A DNA stretch of 64,000 bases. Origin: Macrostomum lignano. Its lineage: Eukaryota. Made by a program: the position numbers and the translations under genes. Below, in pieces: positions 1,322 through 56,053 of this stretch; the stretch's first letter is position 1; every line of letters begins with the position of its first letter. The notes beneath the pieces are model-generated. The model saw only the letters and a list, made by a program, of their open reading frames with translations, made no database searches and was not told where the DNA came from. The stretch spans positions 434,001 to 498,000 of the forward strand of contig NIVC01000414.1 in the NCBI GenBank assembly GCA_002269645.1, given 5' to 3'.

Positions 1322-1590
1322 CGGCTGAGTGTTGGGTGTCTGAGAGTGGATGTCTGAGTGCTGAGTGACTGAGGCCTGGGTGCGTGAGTGCTGGGTGTCA
1401 TAGGGTGGATGTCAGAGGGCTTGATGTCTGAGTGCTGGGTGTCTGAGGGTGGATGTCTGAGTGCTGGGCGTCTGAGTGCTGGGTGTCTGAGTGCTGTATG
1501 TCTGAGTGCTGAGTGTCTGAGTGCTGGGTGTCTATGAGGCAGTGAGGTGCCTGAGGCAGTGATTCAATGAGGTGCCTGAGACGGTGAGCC
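1322..1590. repeat. GTCTGAGTGCTGG-type minisatellite followed by a short GAGGCAGTGAGGTGCCT array
   Basis: Direct inspection. Confidence 0.85.
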
Positions 1591-1611
1591 GAAGTCACAG
1601 GTAGCAGGAGG

Positions 1612-2235
1612 TCACCGCTCCATCCTCTTTCGGTGCCTGAGCACAGTCTCAGACACGGTGATGGAGTGCAGACGCCCCGAGTCCCAACACTGCAGCTTCC
1701 TGGCGGTGTCCCTGCCGATGCCAAACAACAGCATCTCGGTGTCGTCCAGCATGTTGACAATTGAGCAGTGCTCATTGAGCGGCGAGTGCAGAGCTCGGTC
1801 CATGATGGCGCAGACTCTTCCCCTGAGCAGCTTGCACAGGGTGTGGGCGATGTCAGGCCTTGATGCCCCCGGCAGCAGCAGCAGGTGCATGCCCTGCAGG
1901 TACAGCTGAGGTGACAGCTGGCGCAGGTTCACCACGGTGGGGTCAGCGCTGAAGATGTTCTTCTGCGCCTCCGTCAGGCAGCGCGGGGGCTCCACGCGGA
2001 GCGAGCAGGCCTGCCGAAGGCGCACAAACACGTGCGACACCATGAATAAGGGCAGCTCGATCTTCACTCCGGCCGGCAGGTCTTCGTCCGAGTGACCGCC
2101 GCCCACCTCCAGCCCGGCCAGGCGGGGCAGCGCGTCACCGGTGACGCACTTGAGCCGCTCGCCTGTAGCCAGAATGTCCTCCAGGCTGTAGTAGCAGCCA
2201 AAGTGGTGAAGGTCGCGGAACTGGACTGGGTCCTC
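1612..2235 (-). CDS. GINS3: DNA replication complex GINS subunit Psf3, copy A (single coding exon, no ATG in the exon)
   Basis: Frame open from the acceptor ccccag|GAG at 2235: EDPVQFRDLHHFGCYYSLEDILATGERL..KIELPLFM..FSADPTVVNL..LDDTEMLLF..LQCWDSG..RHRKR, matching recalled Psf3 motifs (SLDDIL, KLELPLW, FSADPNVVDL, FQCWEKG). Confidence 0.9.
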   Translation of the reverse strand, partial: EDPVQFRDLHHFGCYYSLEDILATGERLKCVTGDALPRLAGLEVGGGHSDEDLPAGVKIELPLFMVSHVFVRLRQACSLRVEPPRCLTEAQKNIFSADPTVVNLRQLSPQLYLQGMHLLLLPGASRPDIAHTLCKLLRGRVCAIMDRALHSPLNEHCSIVNMLDDTEMLLFGIGRDTARKLQCWDSGRLHSITVSETVLRHRKRMER

Positions 2236-2294
2236 CTGGGGTGGGGGTGTGGGGGTGTGGGGGTTTGGCGTGATGGCATCTGACTGGATCCATG

Positions 2295-2919
2295 TGTGAT
2301 GTATGCACTTTTATGTTTATGGTTATGTTTATGGTTTACGGACTTAGCGGGAGCTAAAGTACCCAGAAAGCTGCGGGCTGCTTAATATTCATTTTACTAT
2401 TTTTTTCGTTAGGCTTCGAGCCTACGTGTTTGCTTTTACAATAGACTAGCTCGAACAAAATACGACATAAAAACAAAAACAGTGGCGACGATGCCGGTTA
2501 TCGAACCATTCAACTGCAGCAACCCTCGGAACTGGGAGGAGTACGAGGAGCGGTTGGAGCGTTTTCTTGTGGTCAAGAAAGTCACTGATAAAAAGGCCAA
2601 CCTGCTGACCCTGATCGGAGAAGAGGCTGAATGAATTATGAGGAAAGACAATTGTTATGGCTATGGGATAATTGCTATGGGATACTGGTACCCGCAAAAC
2701 CGAGTAGCGGGCCGAACTACAGAATCAGCTGGAAGGACTAGCAGTTGAGCCGGTGGTTAAAGCAAAGGCTTCTACAATTAGCAGGACTCCACAGCAGGAA
2801 CAACCTGTGTCTCGATACAGGTTGAGACAGGATTTTGATAAAGCCTCCCATACGTTTCATTACAGGAAAGGAAGGAGTGTAATGTATGCACTTCTATGTT
2901 TATGGTTTAAACACGGACT
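2295..2919 (+). mobile_element. Miniature internally deleted Gypsy (Mag-like) LTR element, TRIM-like
   Basis: 5' LTR TGT..ACA at 2295-2481, PBS TGGCGACG at 2483, gag start MPVIEPFNCSNPRNWEEYEERLERFL at 2491-2634, PPT AGGAAAGGAAGGAG at 2864-2877, and a truncated 3' LTR start at 2878-2919. Confidence 0.78.
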
Positions 2920-3160
2920 GGATCTGTGATGCTGTCTGACTAGATCTGTGATGGTGTCTGACTAGATCTGTGATGGTGTCTGACTAGATCTGTGATGCTG
3001 TCTGACTAGATCTGTGATGCTGTCTGACTAGATCTGTGATGGTGTCTGACTAGATCTGTGATGGTTTGACTAGATCTGAGATGCTGTCTGACTAGATCTG
3101 TGATGGTTTGACTAGATCTGAGATGCTGTCTGACTAGATCTGTGATGGTGTCTGACTAGA
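2920..3160. repeat. 22-bp minisatellite GACTAGATCTGTGATGGTGTCT
   Basis: About 11 copies; only about 2-3 copies at the paralogous site near 22170. Confidence 0.9.
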
Positions 3161-3721
3161 TTACAGGCTGCCTGTCCATCTGTTAGCTAATATTACAAAT
3201 GAAATTATGCAAATCACGAGTCGATGGCGTTGTTCGCTAGCGTTATAACAGGAACTCATGTATTTGGTTATTAATAAAATCTAAAATAACTAAAGAGGAT
3301 CAATAATCTACTAGACAATTAAAATTAAAACTTAAAGCATATTCATTCCACAATGTAAATAAAAATACGGTTCACTACAATAAACCTGTGACAGAGTTAC
3401 ACTAATGAGACAATACTTATTACATAAGCATGGCGTGCAGCACTAAAATGGCATTTCTGATTGTCTTTGATAATTCAAATCCACCTCAGAGTCATCAAGC
3501 AGTTTATCTCCATCACGGATGCAGGGTCCCAAGCAAATTTGTTCTGACAGGTGAATAACAGCAGAACTGCATGACTGCTAAAAGCTGAACAGCATCGATA
3601 AGCAGATGGAATCCATCAGCCTGAGACACTGAGGCTGAGCTCTGATTGAATAAAATAACACCTGGGTTGAAGGCTTCAGCAGCGACTGAGACAACAGTGG
3701 GAAACAGAAATACATGGATTG

Positions 3722-4372
3722 GGATTTTAGCTGAGTGATTGGGACTTTTAGCTGAGTGAGTGGATTTTTAGCTGAGTGAGTGGATTTTTAGCTGAGTGAG
3801 TGGCATTTTAGCTGAGTGAGTGGATTTTTAGCTGAGTGAGTGGTATTTTTAGCTGCGTGAGTGGCATTTTTAGCTGAGTGAGTGGCAGTTTAGCTGAGCG
3901 AGTGGCATTTTAGCTGAGTAAGTGGCATTTTAGCTGAGTGAGTGGATTTTTAGCTGAGTGAGTGGCATTTTTAGCTGAGTGAGTGGCATTTTAGCTGAGT
4001 GAGTGGTATTTTTAGCTGAGTGAGTGGCATTTTTAGCTGAGTGAGTGGCATTTTAGCTGAGTGAGTGGATTTTTAGCTGAGTGAGTGGTATTTTTAGCTG
4101 AGTGAGTGGATTTTTAGCTGAGTGAGTGGTATTTTTAGCTGAGTGAGTGGATTTTTAGCTGAGTGAGTGGATTTTTAGCTGAGTGAGTGACATTTTCAGC
4201 CTAGCCGAGTGAGATTTTTAGCTGAGTGAGTGACATTTTCAGCCTAGCCGAGTGAGATTTTTAGCTGAGTGAGTGACATTTTCAGCCTAGCCGAGTGTGA
4301 TTTTTAGCTGAGTGAGTGGATTTTTAGCTGAGTGAGTGGCATTTTTAGCTGAGTGAGTGGGAGTTTTAGTTG
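3722..4372. repeat. 20-21-bp minisatellite TTTTTAGCTGAGTGAGTGGA
   Basis: Direct inspection; paralogous array at 22747-23945. Confidence 0.92.
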
Positions 4373-4922
4373 ACTAAGTGGCCAGACCAGTAAAACAAAA
4401 AATAAAAACCAGAACAAAGCAGGCAGCAGCACCAGATCAGGCAGTTTGCATCTGTGTAGATTGGTCGGTTTAAACTCAACTGACAGACATAACTGAAATC
4501 ACTGACCTCATCAATAATGAATTTACTCTGGTGCAGTAAAACAAATTTAAATTGACAGCAGTTTCAACTAACAGACAGCAATAAATAAAAGTACATTTAA
4601 TACCCATCGAAATGAAGACCAACAAAAGCAACATTGGAATAAATTTATTTTGTTTCATTTAAAGCAAAGCTACTCACAGTAGTCAGATGCATTTTATATA
4701 CTGAACTGGGCAGTCACAACAGTCAGTGCATTAATAACAGCAGGGACACTGGAAGGTCACACAGGTATTGTGAGTACTGTGAGTAGCAGTTGCGAGGTGA
4801 TTTTGACAGCCGGAGACAAGCAGTAAACAAAACACAGCAGTGACCAGATGCTCATTCAGTATTGAGTAATTCTAATATAAATTCATATCAATAATTCCAG
4901 TGCGGCTCAGTCAGGGCAGCCG

Positions 4923-5095
4923 CTATTTCAGCTTCACCAGATCGGCAAACGCCAAGTCTGCTCTGCTCTGCAGGGCGGGAGACACCGGCTGGCGGGATTG
5001 CGGGGCTCCCGCTGCCTGCCGCTGCTGCTGCTGGGTGCCCGACCAGTTCACCCTGCCGGGGCTGCCGGGGCTGCGCACCTGCTGAGGGGCGGCTG
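4923..5095 (-). pseudogene. Orphan duplicate of the CLINT1 last coding exon
   Basis: AAPQQVRSPGSPGRVNWSGTQ..DLAFADLVKLK* matches 24495-24673 with a 6-bp deletion; the upstream CLINT1 exons are absent from this copy. Confidence 0.8.
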
Positions 5096-5156
5096 CTGAG
5101 AATGGGAGAGGTTGGGGAATAGGGTGAGAATCAGGCAGTTTCCGCAACAGAGAGAA

Positions 5157-6082
5157 AGCAGACACAGCACAAGAGCCAGTCTGAAAGCAGACACAGCACA
5201 AGAGCCAGTCTGAAAGCAGACACAGCACAAGAGCCAGTCTGAAAGCAGACACAGCACAAGAGCCAGTCTGAAAGCAGACACAGCACAAGAGCCAGTCTGA
5301 AAGCAGACACAGCACAAGAGCCAGTCTGAAAGCAGACACAGCACAAGAGCCAGTCTGAAAGCAGACACAGCACAAGAGCCAGTCTGAAAGCAGACACAGC
5401 ACAAGAGCCAGTCTGAAAGCAGACACAGCACAAGAGCCAGTCTGAAAGCAGACACAGCACAAGAGCCAGTCTGAAAGCAGACACAGCACAAGAGCCAGTC
5501 TGAAAGCAGACACAGCACCAGAGCCAGTCTGAAAGCAGACACAGCACCAGAGCCAGTCTGAAAGCAGACACAGCACAAGAGCCAGTCTGAAAGCAGACAC
5601 AGCACAAGAGCCAGTCTGAAAGCAGACACAGCACAAGAGCCAGTCTGAAAGCAGACACAGCACAAGAGCCAGTCTGAAAGCAGACACAGCACAAGAGCCA
5701 GTCTGAAAGCAGACACAGCACAAGAGCCAGTCTGAAAGCAGACACAGCACAAGAGCCAGTCTGAAAGCAGACACAGCACAAGAGCCAGTCTGAAAGCAGA
5801 CACAGCACAAGAGCCAGTCTGAAAGCAGACACAGCACAAGAGCCAGTCTGAAAGCAGACACAACACAAGAGCCAGTCTGAAAGCAGACACAGCACAAGAG
5901 CCAGTCTGAAAGCAGACACAGCACAAGAGCCAGTCTGAAAGCAGACACAGCACAAGAGCCAGTCTGAAAGCAGACACAGCACAAGAGCCAGTCTGAAAGC
6001 AGACACAACACAAGAGCCAGTCTGAAAGCAGACACAGCACCAGAGCCAGTCTGAAAGCAGACACAGCAAAACAGCCAGTCTG
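5157..6082. repeat. 29-bp minisatellite GTCTGAAAGCAGACACAGCACAAGAGCCA
   Basis: About 31 near-perfect copies; contains the duplication breakpoint. Confidence 0.95.
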
Positions 6083-14763: not shown

Positions 14764-20348
<5,585 letters not shown>

Positions 20349-20985
20349 GAGGTTCCTGAGGCAGTGAGGCAGTGAGGTGTCTGAGGCAGTGAGGTGCCTG
20401 AGGCAGTGAGGTGCCTGAGGCAGTGAGGTGTCTGAGGCAGTGAGGTGCCTAAGGCAGTGAGGCGTCTGAGGCAGTGAGGTGCCTGAGGCAGTGAGGTGGC
20501 TGAGGCAGTGAGGTGGCTGAGGCAGTGAGGTGCCTGAGGCAGTGAGTTGCCTGAGGCAGTGAGGTGCCTGAGGCAGTGAGGTGCCTGAGGCAGTGAGGTG
20601 TCTGAGGCAGTGAGGTGCCTAAGTTAGTGAGGTGGCTGAGGCAGTGAGGTGGCTGAGGCAGTGAGGCAGTGAGGTGTCTGAGGCAGTGAGGTGCCCGAGG
20701 CAGTGAGGCAGTGAGTTGCCTGAGGCAGTGAGGTGCCTGAGGCAGTGAGGTGGCTGAGGCAGTGAGGTGGCTGAGGCAGTGAGGCAGTGAGGTGTCTGAG
20801 GCAGTGAGGTGCCTGAGGCAGTGAGGTGACTGAGGCAGTGAGGCAGTGAGGTGCCTGAGGCAGTGAGGTGACTGAGGCAGTGAGGCAGTGAGGTGCCTGA
20901 GGCAGTGAGGTGCCTGAGGCAGTGAGGCAGTGAGGTGCCTGAGGCAGTGAGGTGCCTGAGGCAGTGAGGTGTCTGAGGCAGTGAG
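20349..20985. repeat. GAGGCAGTGAGGTGCCT satellite, right of the LINE
   Basis: Continuation of the array at 14002-14763. Confidence 0.92.
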
Positions 20986-21008
20986 CCGAAGTCACTGGCA
21001 GCAGAAGG

Positions 21009-21632
21009 TCACCGCTCCATCCTCTTTCGGTGCCTGAGCACAGTCTTAGACACGGTGATGGAGTGCAGACGCCCTGAGTCCCAACACTGCAGCTTCCTGG
21101 CGGTGTCCCTGCCGATGCCAAACAACAGCATCTCGGTGTCGTCCAGCATGTTGACAATTGAGCAGTGCTCATTGAGCGGCGAGTGCAGAGCTCGGTCCAT
21201 GATGGCGCAGACTCTTCCCCTGAGCAGCTTGCACAGGGTGTGGGCGATGTCAGGCCTTGATGCCCCCGGCAGCAGCAGCAGGTGCATGCCTTGCAGGTAG
21301 AGCTGAGGCGACAGCTGGCGCAGGTTCACCACGGTGGGGTCAGCGCTGAAGATGTTCTTCTGCGCCTCCGTCAGGCAGTGCGGGGGCTCCACGCGGAGCG
21401 AGCAGGCCTGCCGAAGGCGCACAAACACGTGAGACACCATGAATAAGGGCAGCTCGATCTTCACTCCGGCCGGCAGGTCTTCGTCCGAGTGACCGCCGCC
21501 CACCTCCAGCCCGGCCAGGCGGGGCAGCGCGTCACCGGTGACGCACTTGAGCCGCTCGCCTGTGGCCAGAATGTCCTCCAGGCTGTAGTAGCAGCCAAAG
21601 TGGTGAAGGTCGCGGAACTGGACTGGGTCCTC
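21009..21632 (-). CDS. GINS3: GINS subunit Psf3, copy B (no ATG in the exon)
   Basis: 624-nt open exon from ccccag|GAG; differs from copy A at R/H and E/K in the translated ORFs. Confidence 0.9.
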   Translation of the reverse strand, partial: EDPVQFRDLHHFGCYYSLEDILATGERLKCVTGDALPRLAGLEVGGGHSDEDLPAGVKIELPLFMVSHVFVRLRQACSLRVEPPHCLTEAQKNIFSADPTVVNLRQLSPQLYLQGMHLLLLPGASRPDIAHTLCKLLRGRVCAIMDRALHSPLNEHCSIVNMLDDTEMLLFGIGRDTARKLQCWDSGRLHSITVSKTVLRHRKRMER

Positions 21633-21704
21633 CTGGGGTGGGGGTGTTGGGTTTGGAGTGATGGTGTCTGACTAGATCTGTGATGGTATTTGACTGGATG
21701 TGTG

Positions 21705-22168
21705 TGTGATGTATGCACTTTTATGTTTATGGTCTAAACACGGACTTAGCGGGAGCTAAAGTACCCAGAAAGCTGCGGGCTGCTTAATATTCATTTTACT
21801 ATTTTTGTTCGTTAGGCTTCGAGCCTACGTGTTTGTTTTTACAATAGACTAGCTCCGACAAAATACGACATAAAAACAAAAACAGTGGCGACGATGCCGG
21901 TTATCGAACCATTCAACTGCAGCAACCCTCGGAACTGGGAGGAGTACGAGGAGCGGTTGGAGCGTTTTCTTGTGGTCAAGAAAGTCACTGATAAAAAGGC
22001 CAACCTGCTGACCCTGATCGGAGAAGAGGCTGAATGAATTATGAGGAAAGACAATTCCTATGGCTATGGGATAATTGCTATGGGATACTGGTACCCGCAA
22101 AACCGAGTAGCGGGCCGAACTACAGAATCAGCTGGAAGGACTAGCAGTTGAGCCGGTGGTTAAAGCAA
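21705..22168 (+). mobile_element. Paralogous copy of the mini Gypsy element, with 3' part further deleted
   Basis: LTR 21705-21884, PBS at 21886, gag ATG at 21894; PPT and 3' LTR are absent. Confidence 0.75.
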
Positions 22169-22746
22169 AAGTGTCTGACTAGATCTGTGATGGTGTCTGA
22201 CTAGATCTGTGATGGTGTCTGACTAGATTAGAGACTGCCTGTCCATCTATTAGCTAATACTACAAATGAAATTATGCAAATCCCAAGAGTAGATAGCGTT
22301 GTTCGCTAGCGTTATAACAGATGCCATCCGACTCCAGGAACTCATGTATTTGGTTATAAATAAAATCTAAAATAACTAAAGAGGATCAATAATCTACTAG
22401 ACAAATAAAATTAAAATTTAAAGTATATTCATTCCACAATATAAATAAAAATACGGTTTATTACAACACACCTGTAACAGAGTTACACTAATGAGACAAT
22501 ACTTATCCACCTCAGAGTCATCAAGCAGTTCATCTCCATCACAGATGCAGGGTCCCAAGCAAAGTTGTTCTGACAGGTGAATAAAAGCAGAACTGCATGA
22601 CTGCTAAAAGCTGAACAGCATTGATAAGCAGATGGAATCCATCAGCCTGAGACACTGAGGCTGAGCTCTGATTGAATAAAATAACACCTGGGTTGAAGGC
22701 TTCAGCAGCGACTGAGACGACAGTGGGAAACAGAAATACATAGATG

Positions 22747-23945
22747 GGGATTTTAGCTGAGTGATTGGGACTTTTAGCTGAGTGAGTGGAATTTTTAGCT
22801 GAGTGAGTGGATTTTTAGCTGAGTGAGTGACATTTTAGATGAGTGAATTGGCAGTTTAGCTGAGTGAGTGGGATTTTTTGCTGAGTGAGTGGCATTTTTA
22901 GCTGAGTGAGTGGCAGTTTAGCTGAGTGCGTGGGATTTTTAGCTGAGTGAGTGGCATTTTTAGCTGAGTGAGTGGATTTTTAGCCTACCCGAGTGAGTGA
23001 GATTTTTAGCTGAGTGAGTGGATTTAGCTGAGTGAGTGGCATTTTTAGCCTACCCGAGTGAGTGAGATTTTTTTAGCTGAGTTTGTGGATTTTTAGCTGA
23101 GTGAGTGGGATTTTTAGCTGAGTGAGTGGATTTTTAGCTGAGTGAGTGACATTTTAGATGAGTGATTGGCAGTTTAGCTGAGTGAGTGGGATTTTTTGCT
23201 GAGTGAGTGGCATTTTTAGCTGAGTGAGTGGCAGTTTAGCTGAGTGCGTGGGATTTTTAGCTGAGTGAGTGGCATTTTTAGCTGAGTGAGTGGATTTTTA
23301 GCCTACCCGAGTGAGTGAGATTTTTTTAGCTGAGTTTGTGGATTTTTAGCTGAGTGAGTGGGATTTTTAGCTGAGTGAGTGGCAGTTTAGCTGAGTGAGT
23401 AGCATTTTTAGCCTAGCCGAGTGAGTGGCATTTTTAGCCTAGCCTAGTGAGTGAGATTTTTAGCTGGGAGAGTGGATTCAGCTGAGTGAGTGGCATTTTT
23501 AGCCTAGCTGAGTGAGTGGCATTTTTAGCCTAGCTGAGTGAGTGGCATTTTAGCTGAGTTTGTGGATTTTTAGCTGAGTGAGTGGCATTTTTAGCTGAGT
23601 GAGTGGCATTTTTAGCTGAGTGAGTGGCATTTTTAGCTGAGTGAGTGGATTTTTAGCTGAGTGGGTGGATTTTTAGCTGAGTGAGTGGCATTTTTAGCTG
23701 AGTGAGTGGATTTTTAGCTAAGTGAGTGACATTTTCAGCCTAGCCGAGTGAGATATTTAGCTGAGTGAGTGGCATTTTTAGCTGAGTGAGTGGATTTTTA
23801 GCTGAGTGGGTGGATTTTTAGCTGAGTGAGTGGCATTTTTAGCTGAGTTTGTGGATTTTTAGCTGAGTGAGTGGATTTTTAGCTGAGTGAGTGGCATTTT
23901 TAGCTGAGTTTGTGGATTTTTAGCTGAGTGAGTGGGAGTTTTAGC
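22747..23945. repeat. 20-21-bp minisatellite TTTTTAGCTGAGTGAGTGG
   Basis: Paralog of 3722-4372, about twice as long. Confidence 0.92.
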
Positions 23946-24494
23946 TGACTAAGTGGCCAGACCAGTAAAACAAAAAATAAAAACCAGAACAAAGCAGGCA
24001 GCACCAGATCAGGCAGTTTGCATCTGTGCAGATTGGTCGGTTTAAACTCAACTGACAGACATAACTGAAATCACTGACCTCATCAATAATGAATTTACTC
24101 TGGTGCAGTAAAACAAATTTAAATTGACAGCAGTTTCAACTAACAGACAGCAATAAATAAAAGTACATTTAATACCCATCGAAATGAAGACCAACAAAAG
24201 CAGCATTGGAATAAATTTATTTGGTTTCATTTAAAGCAAAGCTACTCACAGTAGTCAGATGCACTTTATATACTGAACTGGGCAGCCACAACAGTCAGCG
24301 CATTAATAACAGCAGGGACACTGGAAGGTCACACAGGTATTGTGAGTACTGTGAGTAGCAGTTGCGAGGTGATTTTGACAGCCGGAGACAAGCAGTAAAC
24401 AAAACACAGCAGTGACCAGATGCTCATTCAGTATTGAGTAATTCTAATGTAAATTCATATCAATAATTCCAGTGCGGCTCAGTCAGGGCAGCCG

Positions 24495-27195
24495 CTATTT
24501 CAGCTTCACCAGATCGGCAAACGCCAAGTCTGCTCTGCTCTGCAGGGCGGGAGACACCGGCTGGCGGGATTGCGGGGCTCCCGCTGCCTGCCGCTGCTGC
24601 TGCTGGGTGCCCGACCAGTTCACCCTGCCGGGGCTGCCGGGGCCGGAGCTGAGCACCTGCTGAGGGGCGGCTGCTGAGTATGGGGAGTTTATGGAGTGGG
24701 GTGAGAGTCAGGCTGTTCCAGAAGAGAGTCAGACAGCACAAGAGCCAGTCTGAAAGCAGACACCGCACAAGAGCCAGTCTGAAAGCAGACACAGCACAAG
24801 AGCCAGTCTGAAAGCAGACACAACACAAGAGCCAGTCTGAAAGCAGACACAGCACAAGAGCCAGTCTGAAAGCAGACACAGCACAAGAGCCAGTCTGAAA
24901 GCAGACACAGCACAAGAGCCAGTCTGAAAGCAGACACAGCACAAGAGCCAGTCTGAAAGCAGACACAGCACAAGAGCCAGTCTGAAAGCAGACACAGCGC
25001 AAGAGCCAGTCTGAAAGCAGACACAGCACAAGAGCCAGTCTGAAAGCAGACACAGCACAAGAGCCAGTCTGAAAGCAGACACAGCACAAGAGCCAGTCTG
25101 AAAGCAGACACAGCACAAGAGCCAGTCTGAAAGCAGACACAGCACCAGAGCCAGTCTGAAAGCAGACACAGCACAAGAGCCAGTCTGAAAGCAGACACAG
25201 CACAAGAGCCAGTCTGAAAGCAGACACAGCACAAGAGCCAGTCTGAAAGCAGACACAGCACAAGAGCCAGTCTGAAAGCAGACACAGCACAAGAGCCAGT
25301 CTGAAAGCAGACACAGCACCAGAGCCAGTCTGAAAGCAGACACAGCACAAGAGCCAGTCTGAAAGCAGACACAGCACAAGAGCCAGTCTGAAAGCAGACA
25401 CAGCACAAGAGCCAGTCTGAAAGCAGACACAGCACAAGAGCCAGTCTGAAAGCAGACACAGCACAAGAGCCAGTCTGAAAGCAGACACAGCACAAGAGCC
25501 AGTCTGAAAGCAGACACAGCACCAGAGCCAGTCTGAAAGCAGACACAACACAAGAGCCAGTCTGAAAGCAGACACAGCACAAGAGCCATTCTGAAAGCAG
25601 ACACAGCACAAGAGCCAGTCTGAAAGCAGACACAGCACAAGAGCCAGTCTGAAAGCAGACACAGCACAAGAGCCAGTCTGAAAGCAGACACAGCACCAGA
25701 GCCAGTCTGAAAGCAGACACAGCACCAGAGCCAGTCTGAAAGCAGACACAGCACCAGAGCCAGTCTGAAAGCAGACACAGCACCAGAGCCAGTCTGAAAG
25801 CAGACACAGCACAAGAGCCAGTCTGAAAGCAGACACAGCACAAGAGCCAGTCTGAAAGCAGACACAGCACAAGAGCCAGTCTGAAAGCAGACACAGCACA
25901 AGAGCCAGTCTGAAAGCAGACACAGCACAAGAGCCAGTCTGAAAGCAGACACAGCACAAGAGCCAGTCTGAAAGCAGACACAGCACAAGAGCCAGTCTGA
26001 AAGCAGACACAGCACAAGAGCCAGTCTGAAAGCAGACACAGCACAAGAGCCAGTCTGAAAGCAGACACAGCACAAGAGCCAGTCTGAAAGCAGACACAGC
26101 ACAAGAGCGGCTCACCAACAGGCCGCATCGGAGGAGGCTGCAGAGGTTCCGCCTTCATCGGAGTCATTCCCAGCCAGCCAGCCTGACCGTGAGAGCCGCT
26201 AAAGTCCAGATCTGTGAGCAAGTCCAAGTCTCTGCCAGCGGCTGCTGAAGCCACCGGGGCCGATAGAGGCTGCGTCCTGACGGCAGCAAATAAATCAGCG
26301 TCTCCCGGCATGAGACCGGCTCTGGAATTGGGGGTTGGCATTCAGTCACAGCATTCACACTCACAGCAGTCACACTCACAGCAGTCACACTCACAGAATT
26401 CACACTCACAGCATTCACACTCACAGCAGTCACACTCACAGCACCCATCACCCACCCATCGCTCACCCATCACAGCCGGCAGCAGCTGCAGTGCCGCTCG
26501 AGGCCGACTGCCCGAGCTCCAGCAGGTCGTCAGCACCAGCAGCAGGTGCAGCAGCCCAGAGCAGGTGCTGCTGATGCCGCTGTCCGCCCCCATCCAACTC
26601 GGTGACTGCAGCTGCCGACTGAAAGTCAGCGAACTCATCCTCATCATCCTGAGCTGAGTCAGCGGCGGCGGCGGCGGCCGTCTCACCGCCCGTCAGGTCG
26701 ATGACCCGCCGACCGGCTGCTGAAGGCTTGGGCGGCTGCTGCGCCCTCCGCTCGCTCCAACCGTTGTTGCTATGGAAACCGTCTGTGAATTCCTCGTCTC
26801 TTGCGTAAGTTGACACCGTGTTCCACTCCTCCTCTCTGCGGTGTGGGATTGAGCGGCTGGGTTTGAAATGCTGACTGGCATCTTCTGTGAGACAGAATTT
26901 ATTGATTATTATTCAATCTGACTGCAGTTAAAATCATCACTCTGAACCATAAAGATTTTAAAATCATGTTGCAGAGGCCACTGATTATCAAATGCGCAGG
27001 TGAAAGTAAATAAAATTTATAAGTGAGAATTTGCTCATAATGGTTGGTTAATTAATTGCGTCCTGCTTAGCATTATGGGGCCAAGGCCTGAATACAGCAC
27101 TCATGTTAGAAGCCTAATTGCTGAACCATAAATTATTTCACTCGATTTAAATATTGTGGCGCATTAGATATCCGATACAGTGGCTGGCTAAGTTG

Positions 27196-27251
<56 letters not shown>

Positions 27252-30200
27252 GCACAGCTGTATTGAAATGAGCCTCAGATAAACAAACACTGCAGCACAC
27301 AGCAACGGCGGGTAAAAGAAATTTTTACTTATTTTACTTTACCAGCCGTGTTATGTTGGTTACTAAATCTAACAAATTTGAGCTTAGAATAAAAAAGTGA
27401 GATTTTTTTGCTGTCTGCATAGCCTGAGCAGTGTTTGAACAGTGTTTGAGCACAGTGAGCACTGCAGCGTCTGAGCACAGTGAGCACTGCAGTGTTTGAG
27501 CACAGTGAGCACTGCAGTGTTTGAGCACAGTGAGCACTGCAGTGTTTGAGCACAGTGAGCACTGCAGAGTTTGAGCACAGTGAGCACTGCAGCGTCTGAG
27601 CACAGTGAGCACTGCAGTGTTTGAGCACAGTGAGCACTGCAGTGTTTGAGCACAGTGAGCACTGCAGTGTTTGAGCACAGTGAGCACTGCAGAGTTTGAG
27701 CACAGTGAGCACTGCAGAGTTTGAGCACAGTGAGCACTGCAGTGTTTGAGCACAGTGAGCACTGCAGAGTTTGAGCACAGTGAGCACTGCAGTGTTTGAG
27801 CACAGTGAGCACTGCAGTGTTTGAGCACAGTGAGCACTGCAGTGTTTAGCACAGTGAGCACTGCAGTGTTTAGCACAGTGAGCACTGCAGAGTTTGAGCA
27901 CAGTGAGCACTGCAGCATTACCCAAGCTGTCCATATTGCACAGACAGAGCCACTTTGTCCAAGGCGGTCACAGCGGATGCTAGTCGCTCTGGCAGTTTGT
28001 GAACTTTCCTGCAAAAGCAGCAATAATCAGATTAAAGCAGGTATTCTTGCAGAGTCACCGCAGATTAAAGCATTTCATTGCACAGAGGAAGGCACTTGAA
28101 ACCGCAGAATAAATATAAAGCAAAAATATTCGGTACAAAACAATTACAGCACAACAGTTAATAAAGGAATGCTATAGGTACAATATTGACTTAGTGCATG
28201 AAAAACAGGATTCGAGTCCAGGACTTCAAGCACAGGAATTCGGCAAGCCCAAATCTCATTAACCTGGCTGCAGTTCCAGCAGCAGGTGTGAAAATTGCAC
28301 TCAGAACGCCGACACTCACTGGTGGTCACTGTCATCCAGATGCGGCTTCTTTGAAGTCCAAAGGTCCCTGACGCGGTCCATGACTTCGTCCTTGACAGTC
28401 CGGTACTTGCCCGCCTGCCAGTCATCAATGTCTCCCAGCGTGTTTGGCGCCGAAGGGTTGGCGCCGGCGTCGCCGCGCTGCCCAGCTGGCGCCGACTCGC
28501 CGCGCCAGTGAAAGTCGTCTTCGCTCAGCTTGTCGGGGTCGCGGAAGCCGCCGGCGCCGCTGAGGCCGCCGCACTTGACGCGGCTCTTCCTGGCCAGCTG
28601 CCGCTCCTCGCGCAGGCGGCCGTCGTCCTGAATGATCTCGAGCAGCTCGCGGGCCCGCTGCCGGACTGGGGGTGCCACGGTTTATTGGGGCTCAGTGACG
28701 GTTTTTTGGGGCTCAGTGACGGTTTATTGGGTCTTAGTGACGGTTTATTGGGTCTCAGTGACGGTTTATTGGGGCTTAGTGACGCTTTATTGGGTCTTAG
28801 TGACGGTTTATTGGGTCTCAGTGACGGTTTATTGGGGCTTAGTGACGCTTTATTGGGTCTTAGTGACGGTTTATTGGGGCTTAGTGACGGTTTATTGGGG
28901 CTCAGTGACGGTTTATTGGGGCTTAGTGACGGTTTATTGGGGCTCAGTGACGGTTTTTCGGGGCTCAGTGACGGTTTATTGGAGCTCAGTGACGGTTTAT
29001 TGGGGCTCAGTGACGGTTTATTGGAGCTCAGTGACTGTTTATTGGGGCTCGGCTCAGTGACGGTTTATTGGGTCTTAGTGACGGTTTATTGGGTCTCAGT
29101 GACGGTTTATTGGGGCTTAGTGACGCTTTATTGGGTCTTAGTGACGGTTTATTGGGTCTCAGTGACGGTTTATTGGGGCTTAGTGACGCTTTATTGGGTC
29201 TTAGTGACGGTTTATTGGGGCTTAGTGACGGTTTATTGGGGCTCAGTGACGGTTTATTGGGTCTCAGTGACGCTTTATTGGGGCTTAGTGACGGTTTATT
29301 GGGGCTCAGTGACGGTTTTTCGGGGCTCAGTGACGGTTTATTGGAGCTCAGTGACTGTTTATTGGGGCTCGGCTCAGTGACGGTTTATTGGGGCTCAGTG
29401 ACCGTTGGTTGAGGCAATCGAGTATTGGTATCCATGAAAGTCTGAATATCAATTAGTGAGCATGGAGCAGTGAGCATGGAGCAGTGAGCATGGAGCAGTG
29501 AGCATGGAGCAGTGAGCATGGAGCAGTAAGCATGGAGCAGTGAGCAGTGAGCAGTGAGCGATGAGCAATGAGCAATGAGAATTGAGCAGTGAGCAGTGAG
29601 CAGTGAGTAATGTGCAGTGAGAAATGAGTTATGAGCAGTGAGTTATGAGCAATGAGCAGTGAGCAGTCTCACCATTAATGCCCTCGTCTTTGCCCCGCTC
29701 GTCAATGAACTGAAAGGACTCCAGAGAGCGCAGGTCGTATCCGTGCTCCCTGGCGTTGGTCACCACCCGCTCTGAGCCGTGCCTGATCAGGTAGTTCAGC
29801 AGCAGCAGCGACTGCAAAAACGGGTTGCTTTGATTGATCACTCAAAAAATCGATGAGGATATCTGGCTGCTCAGTGACTGATCAGTTCAACTGAGGTGTG
29901 ACACAGAGCTCCATGAATGATTCAGTTGGCACAGTTGCAACAGCTCTGCTTGCTGCGCTACCAGCATTTTCCTGAAGTTCCCAAACTCCACAATGAACTA
30001 CCAAAAAGCAAAAATAAGAGAGAGCACAGAACTCCCAGATCCCCAAGCCTCATCCTCAGCTCACCTTGTACGCCCTGCGCCAGTTCTTGCCTGTGCTGGT
30101 CAGCATCCGCTTCCACATCATGCTCATAACCTCGGGAAACTGCTCGTGACTGAATGTGCACTGGGCCAGCTCCTGCATCAGCTCGCCGTGCGGTCCCCAA

Positions 30201-33200
30201 GCGTCATCGTTTGTTGCTTCGCGAACTTTGGCTTCCACTTCTGTGTAGTTCATCACCACGTTAGTCCTGGCGTGGTAGAGCATTTTAAGAGCGATAAATC
30301 AATACATGTGATATTTCCATCTGGATGAGAAAGTTAACGTAGGAGAGATGGTACGAAGGGCACTGCAAAAGTTTTTAGCTATGACTACATAAAAGCTCAG
30401 ATATGTCTCATATTTCACACGTTTAAAATAGCACATAGAGTTCCCACTACACATTCAGCATCTGCTCCATTTGCGTTATGGAACTGAATCGCGAGCATCC
30501 GGTTTAGACTGCCACCTGTGCCATCAAAGGCTGTCAGCAGCTTTCTCAGACTCTGCCCCGTCCTTTGCAACTGTCACCGGCTGGTTCCGCGAATTTCGGC
30601 GCGGCCGGGATTCGCTCGAAGATGAGGCTCGGGCAGGCAGGCCTCCAACTGCAACAACACCGAAAAAAATCTCTGCTGTGCGCAGCATGATTGAAGCAGA
30701 TCGGCGAGTGACCTATCAGGAGATGGAGGCGACCCTGGGCATTCATTCGCATGCCATCCAGCAGATCCTGCACCATCACATCGGCGTGCGCAAGCTGACG
30801 AGTCGCTGGGTGCCTTACCTGCTCACAGCTGAGCAGAAGCAGGCCAGGTCAGATTGGTGCCAGCAGATGCTCCAGAAGTTCGAAAATGGCCAAGCCAAGG
30901 CGATTTCCGACATCATCAAGTGCGACGAGACTTGGGTCTACTGCTACGAGCCAGAGCGAAAGTGTCAGTCGCGTGTGTGGGCATTCGCCGAGGAGGCACC
31001 TCCGACCAAAGTTGTGCGAGGCAGGAGCACTGGCAAGCTGATGCTGGCTGCGTTCTTCAGGAGGCGGCCATGTGGCAACTGTGAGGCTGCAGCAGAAGCG
31101 CACAGTCACAGCTGCCTGGTACACAGGCATTTGCCTGCCCGAGGTGTTTGCCAGCATCAGAAAATCGCGTCCCAAGACACGAGTACAGGGCCAGATGCTC
31201 CACCAGGACAATGCCAGCGCGCACACTGCGCATGCAACGCAGGATTTTCTGAGGTCCAGCGAAGTTTCTCTGATGAGCCCACCCGCCCTATTCACCTGAC
31301 CTCGCCCCGTGCGACTTTTTCTTGCTCCCGAAAGTCAAAGATCGCATGCGCGGCAAGCGATTTACTTCGCCTGAAGACGCTGCTGATGCCTTCGATGACA
31401 TGTCTGATGCTGAGTGGCGCCACTGCTTTTTTGCTTGGTTTGAGCGCATGAAACTTGGTGTGCAAGCTGGCGGCAAGTACTTTGAGAAGCTGTGAAAGTT
31501 TTATGATAGCTTGTTCTGGCCACTGGCCAGGCATGGCTAAAAGCTTTTGCAGTGCCCCTCGTACTGGCTGGCTGTCACTGAGACTGGGATATGACAGATC
31601 CTCAGTTGCTATTTGTGGTATATGATTACATACATGCGCAACCTCCAAAATTCGGTCGGCCGTGCGACTTAGTTTTAACAAAAATGCGACGTAGTTTTGG
31701 CCAAAAATGCGACTTACATGTAAAAAAAACACTAAAGCAAAATTAACGCAACTTTGGGTAAACGGCAAGAGTAACTATGACTGTCTTATTAAGCCGAAAT
31801 GCCTCGTCAGCTACTTAGTACTACTACTTAGGTGTTTTTCGGGTGGGCATTTTTGCGACTTCCTTGGTTGGCCGCCAAATCGGTTGGATGGATCGGCCGA
31901 CTCGGCCGACTGTTGCGCATGTATGTATGATTATATGCGTGTCTCTCTGCAAGACAAATTTTCGGCCAGACTTATTCCATGTTAAGGTTGAAGAGACACT
32001 TTTTTAAGTACCAAGCCGCGAGCTGCATTCCTGGAGTTTTTTGCTGAGAATGGATGCTACATTTACGACGAAGATATCACTGCCGTACACACTTCAAGAA
32101 TCAGTGAATTGGATATGGCAAGATCAGAGAGATGGTCAGTGTACAAAGAACGGTTAGAGCAATATTTCATAGCTAAAGCCATCACTGATGAAAACATAAA
32201 GAAGGCTGAGCTCATCACAGTGGTGGTGAACTTGTGAAGATGGCTACTGTCTGCAGCGAGATCTGCTGTCTCCAGCCCTTCTTAAAAGTAAGTCTTATGA
32301 AAAGCTAATAACGGCGCTAAGAAACTATTTTGCATTGACGCCAAAGAAAATTGTGGAGTGCTACAATTTCCACAATCGAAATCAACAAGAGGGCGAAGTA
32401 ATCTTAAAATACATAGCGAAATTAAGGAAGCTAGCTGCAGCATGCATGTTTCGAGGCTTTCTGGATGAAGCTATCATGAGAGAAGTTGGTTTGCAGATTG
32501 CGCAGCAAGCGTCTTCTGCAAAAAGATGACATCGTGCTCAAGCCATAAAAATATCAACCACCATAGAAACTGCAGAAAAAGGTGCTACACTCATCAACAC
32601 TAACAAATTAACAACACTAAGTCAGGCTAAGCTCAAAAGACCCACTTTTGACAGATGCTACCGATGTTTAGCGATGGGTCATTGGGCAAGAAGCTGCCCA
32701 CATTGATCTTATGTCTGCAAGGAGTGCAACAGACCTAGACACCTAGAAAAGGCATGCAGAACCTAGCAGTCGACAGAAGCTCACAAAGCCAGACAGAATG
32801 GTCAGAGGAGAAATTACCAACCAAAATTGGGCCAAGGCACAAGAAGAATAAAAATACATGAGCACAAATCAAAGCCAAGGTAGCAATAAGGAGTCTCCCA
32901 ACTTCTCAAACATTAGTAACATTGCCATTGGTGGGAACTGCCAGCTCAGTGAAAATAGAACTAAAAAGAAATGATTCAACCCTTTCTTGGAGACTCTGCA
33001 AATTAACAACAATAAGGTGACGTTTGAGGTAGACACAGGCCTCGAATGCACAATTATTAATAAACAATTAAGTAGATCGAAGTGAAACCAACTGGCATGA
33101 CCTTGATCCTCACTTTGTACTTTAGTGAAAAGATTCCCCTGCTTGGAGAAGCAACCATGCAAGTAGTGGACAATGAAGAGATTGTCAATCATTGACAATG

Positions 33201-35177
33201 TCATGATTGTCAATGACAATCATGGCATTGAGCTTGATGTTGTAATTGTTGATGGCAGAAGACAGAGTTTATTTGCTAAATTCAAAAGGCAATAGACTAG
33301 ATACTTTAGGTCTGGACACTATCTGCTTTATTAATAACATTGTTTTAAAAGTATTAATAGTCAAAGATCATAATAAACTGTTCAGGGACATGTTAAAAAG
33401 ATTGCAAGATTATGGCATTTGACCCAATCAATCAAAGTGCCAGTTTATGATGCCAAGTATCAAATTTCTAGGTCACATCAATGCCATAGGAGTTCCCCAG
33501 TCTCCTAAGATAACCAAAGCTATCATTGATGCTCTTATACCAAGGAGCACTACTATTAGTATATTCACTAGTTGGTCTAAAAAACTACTATTAGAATTTT
33601 TTTCAAAATCTATAAGATCTACTAGAACCACTAAATATGTTGCTTTAAAAAGGTATTAACTTTCAATGGCCTATTAAATGCTAAGAGGCATTCCAAGCAT
33701 GCAAAGCTATGCTGAGCTCTGATGAGATTCTAATATACAATGACCCCATCAAGCTACTCATAGTACAGACTAACATCATGCTATAGAGTAGGTGCTTTTT
33801 TGTCACATACACTTAGACTTGAAAGAGAAGCCTATATGTTATGTATCTTGAAGTTTGTCTAAAGCATAGTGGAAATACTTTTAGATTAGGGATGGTTTAA
33901 CCATTGTGTTTGCAATAAAGAAATTATCATTTAAAGAGCTTTAGAAGGAAAAAAACTTTGTGTCTACTTAGCAAAATGAATAAAATTCACTATGGTCAAT
34001 GCTAATCTTTATAGTTGACTAAGTGTATAATTGACTTTAATAACTATGAAATTAATAATTACAATATCAAATAGTTTATTACTTAAATAAAATAGTCCCC
34101 TATTTAATTAAACCAGAGAATTATAAAACAAAAATATACCAAAAGTAAAAATTGAAATTAAGATACTTACATTTTAACATTTATAAAATACTATTAATAA
34201 AAACTAGTAAATTTTTATTGAACTATTTCAATTATTTTTTGTTTTACTTTAACTTCTTAGAAAAAATCAATGCATTTTTAAAATTTAGTTTTCCATTTTT
34301 GTAAGGCCAGGAGCTATTCATTTTGATAAAATTTAACTATTATAACTATGTACATGGAGACTATGCCAAATATAAACTTAATCATTTTAAGTTAACTGTG
34401 TATATTGATTGGGACTTGGAACTTTGGTCCCATCTGCTGTCTTAGTGATCTTTATACACCAAGTTGTATACCAAAAGGGTATGCTAGGCCCCTTTATACA
34501 TCAAGTTGTATACCAATAGTATACTCTAGGTCTCTGTAGTCTGTATACTAAAAATGCTGGTATACATGTAGGCCTATACTATCTAGAGTCTGGCATATAT
34601 ACATTTAGCCCCAAAATAACCTGTCAGTCTATCACCTAAATGGATTTCACCAAAGTGACTATCACCAAACTAAAGTAGAAGTGTAGATAAAAAATAGAAA
34701 GTAGAACTATTACCAAGGTAACCAATTCATTTCTGCAACTTGTCTTTGGCCAAAAATAGAATCCAGTTCAGTTCCATTCTACAATCCACCTTACACTTTT
34801 AGGCCTAGTAGTTATATATACAATTTCACTATTTAAATGATTGTATATGCCTAATGAAAGCAAATATTTTTAATAAATAAAAATATAGCTAGGGATCCAT
34901 TCTTGCTTTTGCTTGCATTGTGTGCCTATATACTGGTTTGTTCAATGTGAATTTTCAAGTGAAACCATAGGCTCCTCAGTGCATAAAAAATACAAACTAG
35001 GCCTATGGCATCTTTTAATAAACACATTGCCTTTTTCACTCCTTGCATCACTTCCAGAAATGGTAAAATTAAAAAATCAGGGTTAGCAAGACTAAAGACA
35101 CAAAAGCCATAACCTTATAGCCTTACTTACATTTTTTCTGCTAAGTCCTTTCCTTTGTACAATACATCTCGAAGCAT
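24495..35177 (-). CDS. CLINT1: Clathrin interactor 1 / epsinR (ENTH domain), about 495 aa
   Basis: Exons 35131-35177, 30065-30266, 29673-29811, 28320-28665, 26467-26835, 26116-26321, 24495-24673; GT-AG, phases consistent, 1488 nt. ENTH: KDLAEKMTNVVMNYTEVEAKVREATNDDAWGP..KNWRRAYKSLLLLNYLIRHGSERVV..DERGKDEGINVR..LREER. The tail carries DEFADF and DLL motifs. Confidence 0.9.
24730..26108. repeat. 29-bp minisatellite filling the last CLINT1 intron
   Basis: About 47 copies; same unit as 5157-6082. Confidence 0.95.
26342..26445. repeat. 20-bp repeat CAGTCACACTCACAGCA-type in a CLINT1 intron
   Basis: About 5 copies. Confidence 0.8.
27196..27252. repeat. (GACA)n microsatellite
   Basis: Direct inspection. 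Confidence 0.95.
27425..27915. repeat. 25-bp minisatellite GAGCACAGTGAGCACTGCAGTGTTT
   Basis: About 19 copies, intronic. Confidence 0.93.
28675..29402. repeat. 21-bp minisatellite CAGTGACGGTTTATTGGGGCT
   Basis: About 34 copies, intronic. Confidence 0.93.
29455..29665. repeat. 7/14-bp repeat GAGCAGT / GAGCATGGAGCAGT
   Basis: Direct inspection. Confidence 0.85.
30354..31561 (+). mobile_element. Mariner (DD34D) transposon with a defective transposase, in CLINT1 intron 1
   Basis: TA flanks; 30-bp TIRs CGA(A/G)GGGCACTGCAAAAG(T/C)TTTTAGC(T/C)ATG; start MELNREH at 30478 followed by a deletion/frameshift; motifs WVPYLLT, CDETWVY, HQDNASAH and SPDLAPCDF (frameshifted). Confidence 0.92.
32090..33930 (+). 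mobile_element. Heavily decayed Gypsy (Mag-like) gag-pol remnant
   Basis: WSVYKERLEQYFIAK, IVECYNFHNRNQQEGE, CCHC knuckle CYRCLAMGHWARSC, protease FEVDTG, RT FLGH; many stops and frameshifts. Confidence 0.8.

Positions 35178-49576: not shown

Positions 49577-52518
<2,942 letters not shown>

Positions 52519-54076: not shown

Positions 54077-56053
<1,977 letters not shown>

What the first reader, a model, noticed from the sequence alone, without database searches (positions are those of the whole stretch)
21009..24673. GINS3 has no identifiable start codon of its own: candidate spliced-leader-donated AUG in a CLINT1-GINS3 operon
Seen: in both copies the Psf3 frame begins at a phase-0 acceptor (ccccag|GAG GAC CCA at 2235 and 21632), with no in-frame ATG before the upstream stop and no ATG mini-exon conserved in both copies. 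The exon already covers essentially the whole protein. It lies on the same strand about 2.9 kb (mostly satellite) after the CLINT1 stop. Established: flatworm spliced leaders end in AUG, that AUG can initiate translation, and flatworms have trans-spliced operons. Inference: SL-AUG + GAG gives MEDPVQF.., so an essential replication gene would depend on trans-splicing for its initiator Met.
Basis: inference. Interest (0 to 1): 0.75.

Follow-up and report, generated by a model that had tools for sequence, protein, structure and literature searches.

The report
Start-codon-less GINS3 copies in Macrostomum
Two tandem copies of the replication gene GINS3 in the flatworm Macrostomum lignano lack a start codon of their own and most likely borrow the AUG at the end of the trans-spliced leader, a mechanism already known in flatworms; a third copy elsewhere in the genome does have an in-frame ATG.

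Summary
Both minus-strand GINS3/PSF3 exons (21632-21009 and 2235-1612) open directly after ...CACCCCCACCCCAG|GAGGAC. Neither has an in-frame ATG, GTG or TTG before codon 57. The first ATG in any frame is codon 65, inside the conserved PSF3 N-domain.

The window is Macrostomum lignano: two of its genes match M. lignano proteins at 100% identity. The published 35-nt spliced leader (SL) of this species ends in ATG. Splicing at this acceptor would put that AUG in frame, giving M-EDPVQF.

The two copies differ by 6 synonymous and 2 non-synonymous changes (dN/dS 0.11), so both appear to be under selection. I found no credible upstream ATG exon.

No RNA data could be reached, so trans-splicing is inferred, not shown.

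Two corrections:
- Copy A carries only the last CLINT1 exon, so it cannot sit in a CLINT1-GINS3 operon.
- A third GINS3 copy (GenBank NIVC01001872.1) has the same acceptor but an in-frame genomic ATG 12 codons upstream, in an indel-variable satellite-derived tract. The species is therefore not wholly dependent on the SL AUG.

The mechanism has been known since 2006. This is a new member of a known kind, of modest interest.

The parts
21009..21632 (-). GINS3/PSF3 copy B: single coding exon of 207 codons plus TGA, with no initiator codon of its own
   Evidence: Pfam PSF3_N. Aligns to human GINS3 residues 19-209 at 7e-28. Translation.
21633..21674 (-). Copy B: C/A-rich tract ending in AG (21634-21633), the putative 3' (trans-)splice acceptor in phase 0. 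Includes the in-frame TAG at 21674-21672.
   Evidence: The C-rich style matches cis acceptors of the neighbouring CLINT1, e.g. ggcacccccag|T.
1612..2235 (-). GINS3/PSF3 copy A: same exon, 8 nt differences from copy B (6 synonymous, 2 non-synonymous), no indels
2236..2279 (-). Copy A acceptor tract (41 nt) with an upstream ATG (2279-2277) that is out of frame here. The same ATG is in frame in the third copy, L001.
21750..22169 (+). Remnant of an LTR-retroelement 5' end, antisense to GINS3, with a gag-like N-terminal ORF at 21885-22037. It lies 120-540 nt upstream of the acceptor and is also present in copy A (2346-2766).
   Evidence: A longer degenerate element occupies the same place in L001.
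22747..23956 (.). 21-bp minisatellite filling about 42% of the CLINT1-GINS3 gap (copy A: 3720-4381)
24495..24674 (-). Last coding exon of CLINT1 (epsin-4), ending ...ADLAFADLVKLK* with TAG at 24497-24495. AATAAA at 24221-24216 and ATTAAA at 24173-24168 follow.
   Evidence: 100% match to M. lignano A0A1I8GJP2 residues 434-492. Stop and poly(A) signals.
24495..35177 (-). Whole CLINT1 coding region in 7 coding exons. The first coding exon is 35177-~35131 with donor AAT|GTAAGT.
   Evidence: tblastn of P0273. ENTH domain matches PDB 1xgw Epsin 4 at 2e-67.
4923..5105 (-). Copy A: duplicated last CLINT1 exon only. No other CLINT1 exon lies upstream of copy A.
1535..6082 (.). Duplicated segment A. Its partner is 20923-25651, offset about 19.4 kb, 93-95% identical. 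One boundary lies inside the 29-bp satellite of the last CLINT1 intron.
   Evidence: Self-BLAST.

Best explanation
GINS3 in this M. lignano region is a single-exon gene whose reading frame opens directly at a 3' splice acceptor. The pre-mRNA upstream of the AG is an outron. It holds a satellite unit, a C-rich tract, a retroelement remnant and a minisatellite.

The 35-nt spliced leader is trans-spliced onto ...CCCCAG|GAG. Its 3'-terminal AUG is the only AUG in the leader. It becomes the first AUG of the mRNA and is in frame, so translation yields M-EDPVQFRDL... (208 aa).

Because the leader supplies the start, the genomic sequence upstream is free to drift. Three near-identical copies show this:
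- one has an in-frame ATG (L001);
- one has the same ATG out of frame (copy A);
- one has no ATG at all (copy B).

Shown: the gene identity, the missing ATG, the phase-0 acceptor, the species, the constraint on the copies, and the variable upstream tract. Inferred: that trans-splicing happens at this AG and that the SL AUG is the initiator.

Co-transcription with CLINT1 is possible for copy B (my estimate about 0.35) and impossible in that form for copy A.
For: - Species: the window is M. lignano. Its PDZ-LIM ORF is 100% identical to A0A1I8GWV0, and its CLINT1 exons are 100% identical to A0A1I8GJP2 and A0A1I8GLF6.
- Leader: the M. lignano SL ends ...TTGCATG. About 30% of genes and 85% of neoblast-specific genes are trans-spliced (PMC8629364). 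Sister subunit GINS4 (Mlig009982.g4) is flagged TRANSSPLICED.
- Expression: GINS3 appears among replication genes that fall in TIM29 RNAi worms, so it is expressed with the proliferation set.
- Precedent: the SL AUG serves as initiator in S. mansoni, where more than 40 cDNAs need it (Cheng 2006, cited in PMC9851317).
- No genomic start: there is no ATG, GTG or TTG before codon 57, yet the PSF3_N domain (residues 16-67) is intact. Translation must therefore begin upstream of residue 16.
- N-terminal length: full-length orthologues have 2-20 residues before the conserved block; this exon has 14.
- Coding signal: GC3 is 0.81 in the first 16 codons, 0.84 in the rest, and 0.54 just upstream of the AG.
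- Conservation pattern: the CDS has 0 indels and 8 substitutions, 6 synonymous and 2 non-synonymous (dN/dS 0.11, binomial P=0.004). The 110 nt upstream has 8 gap events and 71% identity.
- Acceptor: CCACCCCAG|GAG is identical in all three copies, while the tract before it is 32, 41 or 33 nt long.
- No alternative exon: no conserved ATG mini-exon with a GTRAG donor exists in any copy.
- Annotation gap: no M. lignano GINS3 protein is in the collections, although other M. lignano proteins are. The L001 copy is unannotated in GenBank. This fits a CDS that looks 5'-partial once the SL is trimmed.
Against: - No RNA evidence was obtainable; the junction is an inference.
- The acceptor CCCCAG does not match the enriched trans-splice motif [T/C]TNCAG at position -5 (PMC8629364; only 44% of sites carry that motif).
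- The L001 copy has an in-frame genomic ATG 36 nt upstream. A conventional start is therefore possible for at least one copy.
- CLINT1 next door has a tiny first coding exon 4.9 kb upstream that I first missed. Small distant ATG exons do occur in this region.
- No canonical poly(A) signal follows the GINS3 stop in any copy, so the transcript structure is not understood.
Confidence: 0.58

Rival explanations
1. The conventional start is the genomic ATG preserved in frame in the L001 copy (M-PSRQTPTPPPQ-EDPVQF). On this view the two window copies are recent duplicates that lost it: copy A through an 8-nt expansion, copy B through two substitutions plus a 1-nt deletion. They would be untranslated or decaying, and no SL AUG is needed.
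For: L001 has an in-frame ATG at 25165-25167 with an open frame down to GAG. Copy A keeps the same ATG out of frame. M. lignano is a hidden polyploid with many redundant gene copies (PMC10468722, PMC8629364), so losing one copy could be tolerated.
Against: - The start-less branches together show 6 synonymous and 2 non-synonymous changes (P=0.004 against neutrality), with no frameshift or stop in 624 nt.
- The ATG sits in a 22-bp satellite unit followed by a length-variable C-rich tract, which behaves like non-coding sequence.
- An upstream ATG falls in frame by chance about one time in three.
- A complete 219-aa ORF should have been easy to annotate, yet no such protein is in GenBank or UniProt.
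- The ATG context is weak: C at -3 and C at +4.
Confidence: 0.17
2. A small upstream coding exon carrying the ATG is cis-spliced to this acceptor or a nearby one, as happens in the neighbouring CLINT1.
For: The first coding exon of CLINT1 is 47 nt long and lies 4.9 kb upstream. Eight weak phase-0 candidates are shared by all three copies, for example ATGAATATTAAGCAGCCCGCAGCTTTCTGG|GTACTT at 21794-21765. A conserved ...TTGATGAG|GTCAGT could join the AG at 21582 to give M-S-LEDIL.
Against: - None of the shared candidates has the GT[G/A]AG donor found at 65% of M. lignano introns (PMC8629364).
- Most candidates lie inside the CLINT1 3'UTR and poly(A) region or inside a retroelement remnant.
- The M-S-LEDIL option would make 16 high-GC3 codons intronic.
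- Cis-splicing from the penultimate CLINT1 exon (phase 1) is out of frame.
Confidence: 0.1
3. Translation starts at a non-AUG codon (in-frame CUG at codon 18 in a good Kozak context, or an upstream AUC), or at the internal Met65.
For: AGC CTG G has A at -3 and G at +4. ATC codons lie in frame upstream in both copies. Met65 is the first genomic AUG.
Against: Near-cognate starts are inefficient for a stoichiometric CMG subunit. A Met65 start would delete almost all of the PSF3_N domain, which is still recognisably conserved. Neither option is needed if the mRNA is trans-spliced.
Confidence: 0.05

Closest known systems
[quoted passage not shown]
   Same: A flatworm SL ending in AUG. The acceptor is in phase with the ORF. 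The recipient gene lacks a genomic AUG before its conserved domain.
   Different: A different flatworm order (Macrostomorpha) and a different gene. There the initiation was demonstrated experimentally; here it is only inferred from genomic sequence. Here three near-identical copies differ in whether a genomic ATG is also available.
slORFs: ORFs created by SL addition in nematodes, Oikopleura and trypanosomes (slORFfinder, PMC9851317)
   Same: The start codon is contributed by the leader, not by the gene.
   Different: Those mostly use near-cognate NUG codons in the leader and are often alternative or overlapping ORFs. Here a true AUG would open the main, conserved ORF.
M. lignano trans-spliced neoblast genes and operons (Ustyantsev & Berezikov 2021, PMC8629364; e.g. 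GINS4 = Mlig009982.g4, TRANSSPLICED)
   Same: The same species. GINS3 is a conserved replication gene of the class that is 85% trans-spliced. It lies on the same strand as its neighbour, with a repeat-filled gap.
   Different: Trans-splicing of GINS3 itself was not verified. The repeat-adjusted distance (about 0.8-1.2 kb) straddles the 1 kb operon cutoff, far from the 100-bp mode. Copy A lacks the upstream gene.

Membership tests
GINS complex subunit 3 (PSF3) | PSF3 N-terminal domain plus full-length homology to solved GINS3 structures | tested here: met
   Pfam PF22466 at 29.3 bits against a cutoff of 27. PDB 2eho_D and 8 further entries, E=7e-28, covering residues 19-209. 231 homologues in the 1.8-billion-protein library.
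SL-AUG-initiated flatworm mRNA | The organism's spliced leader ends in AUG | tested here: met
   Species identified as M. lignano. Its SL sequence ends ...TTGCATG (PMC8629364). The G3 2023 genome paper also treats that ATG as a start codon (PMC10468722).
SL-AUG-initiated flatworm mRNA | The SL AUG falls in frame with the main ORF, with no intervening stop | tested here: met
   Phase-0 acceptor CAG|GAG in three copies. The adjacent AGs at 21629 and 21617 are also in phase 0.
SL-AUG-initiated flatworm mRNA | No genomic AUG is available upstream of the conserved domain | tested here: inconclusive
   Met for window copies A and B. Not met for the third copy, L001, which has an in-frame ATG 12 codons upstream.
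SL-AUG-initiated flatworm mRNA | The mRNA is actually trans-spliced at that acceptor | not testable with these tools
   No M. lignano transcript or read data is reachable. Exact look-ups and junction scans were empty.
SL-AUG-initiated flatworm mRNA | Translation starts at the SL AUG in vivo | not testable with these tools
   Needs N-terminal proteomics, ribosome profiling or a reporter.
M. lignano operon (criteria of PMC8629364) | Adjacent genes on the same strand, with no intervening opposite-strand gene | tested here: met
   CLINT1 (35177->24495) and GINS3-B (21632->21009) are both on the minus strand. Only a dead retroelement fragment lies between them. This does not hold for copy A, which has only the last CLINT1 exon upstream.
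M. lignano operon (criteria of PMC8629364) | Repeat-adjusted intergenic distance under 1 kb | tested here: inconclusive
   About 2.5 kb from the CLINT1 poly(A) signal to the acceptor. Subtracting the 1,210-nt satellite, the 22-bp units and the roughly 420-nt retroelement remnant leaves about 0.8 kb, or about 1.2 kb if the remnant is not masked.
M. lignano operon (criteria of PMC8629364) | The downstream gene is SL trans-spliced, or a polycistronic precursor is detected | not testable with these tools
   No RNA data.

The most novel reading that the evidence does not exclude
The three M. lignano GINS3 copies may capture start-codon turnover in progress. Because the spliced leader always delivers an in-frame AUG at this acceptor, the genomic ATG has become dispensable. 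It is seen in all three states: in frame (L001), frameshifted (copy A) and absent (copy B). Meanwhile the coding exon stays under purifying selection. The same buffering would let a promoter-less duplicate such as copy A, which sits behind a partial ankyrin-kinase gene, stay functional when read from any upstream transcript.
Probability: 0.3. Interest if true: 0.5.

Novelty: new member of a known kind. Interest (0 to 1): 0.3.

Why it matters
If confirmed, an essential CMG-helicase subunit in a stem-cell model flatworm would, in some gene copies, be translatable only after SL trans-splicing. That would be a concrete case for annotation pipelines that trim the leader and then discard 'start-less' ORFs; GINS3 is indeed missing from the public M. 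lignano protein sets. It would also show how a leader-borne AUG relaxes selection on genomic start codons. It does not reveal a new mechanism.

Tried and rejected
- Transcript evidence:
  - The protein search of 5.8 billion sequences found nothing at E<=1e-10.
  - The full HMMER scan of 1.8 billion representatives gave a best hit of 35% identity and no M. lignano GINS3.
  - Exact look-ups of M+EDPV..., the GTG-start form and the Met65 form were absent.
  - Metagenome scans for the SL-GINS3 junction and for the exon returned 0 hits.
- Supplements: tables of five M. lignano papers were searched for GINS3, CLINT1 and Mlig011426. Only GO lists naming GINS3 and a TRANSSPLICED flag for GINS4 turned up.
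- SL gene: no SL RNA gene is in the window, and Rfam found nothing.
- Retrocopy of an SL-bearing mRNA: rejected, because no SL remnant precedes GAG and a genuine AG acceptor is there instead.
- CLINT1-GINS3 fusion by cis-splicing: the penultimate CLINT1 donor is phase 1, so the join is out of frame. The exon-1 donor (phase 2) would also be out of frame and would split the ENTH domain; there is no support for it.
- My own first call of a CLINT1 start at 30283 was wrong. Annotated M. lignano proteins show a first coding exon at 35177-35131.


Full report
**What is there**

The finding lies on the minus strand. Translating 21632->21009 gives a 207-codon open frame ending in TGA. It matches Pfam PSF3_N above the curated cutoff. 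It also aligns to human GINS3 in solved CMG/GINS structures over residues 19-209 of 216, at E=7e-28. A second copy sits at 2235->1612. Both belong to a segmental duplication with an offset of about 19.4 kb and 93-95% identity.

Both copies are preceded by ...ACACCCCCACCCCAG|GAGGACCCA. Going upstream in frame, copy B reaches a TAG after 13 codons. Copy A reaches a stop after 25 codons. Neither stretch contains a Met. There is no ATG, GTG or TTG in the first 56 codons, and the first ATG in any frame is codon 65. That codon lies inside the region that still scores as the PSF3 N-domain (residues 16-67). Translation must therefore begin upstream of residue 16.

In about 200-aa orthologues, the residue aligned to query position 13-15 sits at position 2-20. 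The exon's 14 leading residues are therefore a normal N-terminus lacking only its Met.

**Organism**

The single-exon PDZ-LIM ORF at 42741-44015 matches Macrostomum lignano UniProt entries: 100% identity over the part covered by A0A1I8GWV0, and 83% over 99% of the query for A0A1I8HUK8. The CLINT1 exons are 100% identical to A0A1I8GLF6 and A0A1I8GJP2. The window is M. lignano.

The published SL of this species is CGGTCTCTTACTGCGAAGACTCAATTTATTGCATG. Its only ATG is the last three bases. About 30% of genes and 85% of neoblast-specific genes are trans-spliced, and about 15% of genes are assigned to operons (PMC8629364). The M. cliftonense and M. hystrix genome paper explicitly treats the terminal ATG as a translation start (PMC10468722). 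Use of the flatworm SL AUG as initiator was shown for S. mansoni, where more than 40 cDNAs require it (Cheng et al. 2006, as summarised in PMC9851317; see also PMC12582326).

**Gene neighbourhood**

CLINT1 (epsin-4; its ENTH domain matches PDB 1xgw at 2e-67) runs from 35177 to 24495 on the minus strand in seven coding exons. Its last exon (24674-24495) is a 100% match to the C-terminus of the annotated M. lignano protein. AATAAA and ATTAAA signals lie 274 and 322 nt after the stop.

The 2,862-nt gap before GINS3-B contains the following, in order:
- unique sequence;
- a 1,210-nt 21-bp minisatellite;
- an AT-rich stretch;
- 22-bp repeat units;
- a retroelement remnant of about 420 nt, antisense to GINS3, with a gag-like N-terminal ORF;
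- one more 22-bp unit;
- the C-rich tract.

The upstream boundary of the duplication lies inside the 29-bp satellite of the last CLINT1 intron. Copy A therefore carries only the last CLINT1 exon. Farther upstream on its strand is the duplicated 5' part of an ankyrin-kinase gene. A CLINT1-GINS3 operon can thus be considered only for copy B. There the repeat-adjusted distance is about 0.8-1.2 kb, which straddles the 1 kb cutoff of PMC8629364 and is far from its 100-bp mode.

**Are the start-less copies alive?**

The two CDSs differ at 8 sites and have no indels. Six changes are synonymous and two are not: pS 0.039, pN 0.0043, ratio 0.11. The probability of two or fewer non-synonymous changes out of 8 under neutrality is 0.004.

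Non-repetitive flanks are 98% identical. The 110 nt just upstream of the acceptor are only 71% identical, with eight gap events. GC3 is 0.81 in the first 16 codons, 0.84 in the rest, and 0.54 upstream of the AG. Coding constraint therefore begins at, or within a few bases of, the AG.

GINS3 is listed among M. lignano DNA-replication genes that fall on TIM29 knock-down. GINS4 is flagged TRANSSPLICED in the Mlig_RNA_3_7 annotation.

**Search for a cis start exon**

It is absent from copy B, which reads GTG there. Relaxing the donor criteria gives 43 candidates in copy B, of which 17 are identical in copy A. None has a GT[G/A]AG donor. Eight weak candidates are shared by all three copies. They lie in the CLINT1 3'UTR and poly(A) region, at a satellite edge, or in the retroelement remnant.

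A conserved ...ATGAG|GTCAGT could join an internal AG at 21582 to give M-S-LEDIL. That would turn 16 high-GC3 codons into intron.

I do not dismiss this rival. CLINT1 itself has a 47-nt first coding exon 4.9 kb upstream, which I first overlooked. That exon, however, has a canonical GTAAGT donor.

**A third copy changes the picture**

One M. lignano CLINT1 protein (BOX15_Mlig011426g1) led to GenBank scaffold NIVC01001872.1, fetched as locus L001. CLINT1 ends there at the same stop. A third GINS3 copy lies 5.18 kb downstream at L001:25201-25824. It differs from copy A by one amino acid and from copy B by three.

No gene is annotated at that position in GenBank. No M. lignano GINS3 protein exists in the searched collections either.

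The acceptor CCACCCCAG|GAGGAC is the same. But an ATG 36 nt upstream (25165-25167) is in frame, reading M-PSRQTPTPPPQ-EDPVQF. Copy A has the same ATG, but its C-rich tract is 41 nt rather than 33, so the ATG is out of frame. Copy B has ACA in place of the ATG and a 32-nt tract.

The ATG belongs to a variant unit of the 22-bp satellite, and the tract behaves like a length-variable non-coding repeat. Assigning substitutions to branches gives:
- copy A: 2 synonymous, 0 non-synonymous;
- copy B: 4 synonymous, 2 non-synonymous;
- L001: 1 synonymous, plus one conservative non-synonymous codon change (R126K).

The extra length of the L001 gap is a degenerate LTR retroelement, antisense to GINS3. The window copies keep only the end of it.

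**Interpretation**

The most economical reading is that all copies are trans-spliced at the conserved AG, and that the SL AUG opens the frame. The upstream ATG in L001 would then be incidental: an upstream ATG falls in frame about one time in three, and trans-splicing would remove it anyway. I put this at about 0.58.

The main rival, at about 0.17, is that the L001-type ATG is the real start and the window copies are recently disabled duplicates. The synonymous bias on exactly those branches argues against it.

A cis ATG exon gets about 0.10. Non-AUG or Met65 initiation gets about 0.05.

None of these can be settled without RNA or protein data, and I could not reach any.

**Novelty**

The mechanism has been established in flatworms since 2006, and the M. 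lignano community is aware of it. This would be one more gene using it, so the novelty is 'new member of a known kind' and the interest is about 0.3.

The modestly new angle is the three-state variation of the genomic ATG among near-identical copies. It would illustrate how a leader-borne AUG relaxes selection on genomic start codons. It might also explain why the gene is absent from public protein sets.

Noticed in passing
L001:25165-25824 (GenBank NIVC01001872.1): A third GINS3 copy with an in-frame genomic ATG 12 codons upstream of the shared acceptor. It is not annotated as a gene in the GenBank record.
   Followed up: yes
window 20009-21008, 612-1611; L001:25825-26824: No AATAAA or ATTAAA lies within about 640 nt after the GINS3 stop in any copy. 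A 15-17-bp satellite starts 24-80 nt after the stop. In L001 the next same-strand gene (ankyrin repeats plus protein kinase) starts 3.3 kb downstream, mostly across satellites, so a three-gene transcription unit is conceivable.
   Followed up: partly
window 24733-26108 and 5154-6082: A 29-bp minisatellite (47 and 32 copies) inside the last CLINT1 intron is open in all three minus-strand frames, giving spurious 450-560-aa ORFs. It is also the breakpoint of the segmental duplication.
   Followed up: yes
window 15200-20331 (+): A non-LTR retrotransposon with endonuclease, reverse transcriptase and RNase H domains lies just downstream of GINS3 copy B, in antisense orientation. No equivalent lies downstream of GINS3 in L001.
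   Followed up: partly
window 30262-35177 (-): The in-frame ATG at 30283 looks like a CLINT1 start but is not one. Annotated M. lignano proteins start in a 47-nt coding exon at 35177-35131. Its 4.9-kb intron holds a Tc1/mariner-like transposase remnant (30432-31448, +).
   Followed up: yes
window 8383-10293 and 10793-12696 (-): A 2.4-kb tandem duplication carries ankyrin-repeat ORFs (8602-9156, 11012-11563). They correspond to the 5' part of the ankyrin-kinase gene that follows GINS3 in L001. GINS3 copy A therefore sits behind a partial copy of that gene.
   Followed up: partly
window 42741-44018 (+): A single-exon PDZ plus three-LIM (Zasp/Enigma-type) gene with its own ATG. It served to identify the species.
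   Followed up: yes
window 49508-50182, 54062-54772, 57673-58389 (+): Three tandem ORFs with weak two-pore-domain potassium channel (Ion_trans_2) matches, probably first exons of paralogous K2P genes.
   Followed up: no
L001:21992-24759 (-): A degenerate LTR retroelement (gag, protease, RT and integrase ORF pieces, broken frames) lies antisense between CLINT1 and GINS3. The window copies retain only about 420 nt of its end.
   Followed up: partly
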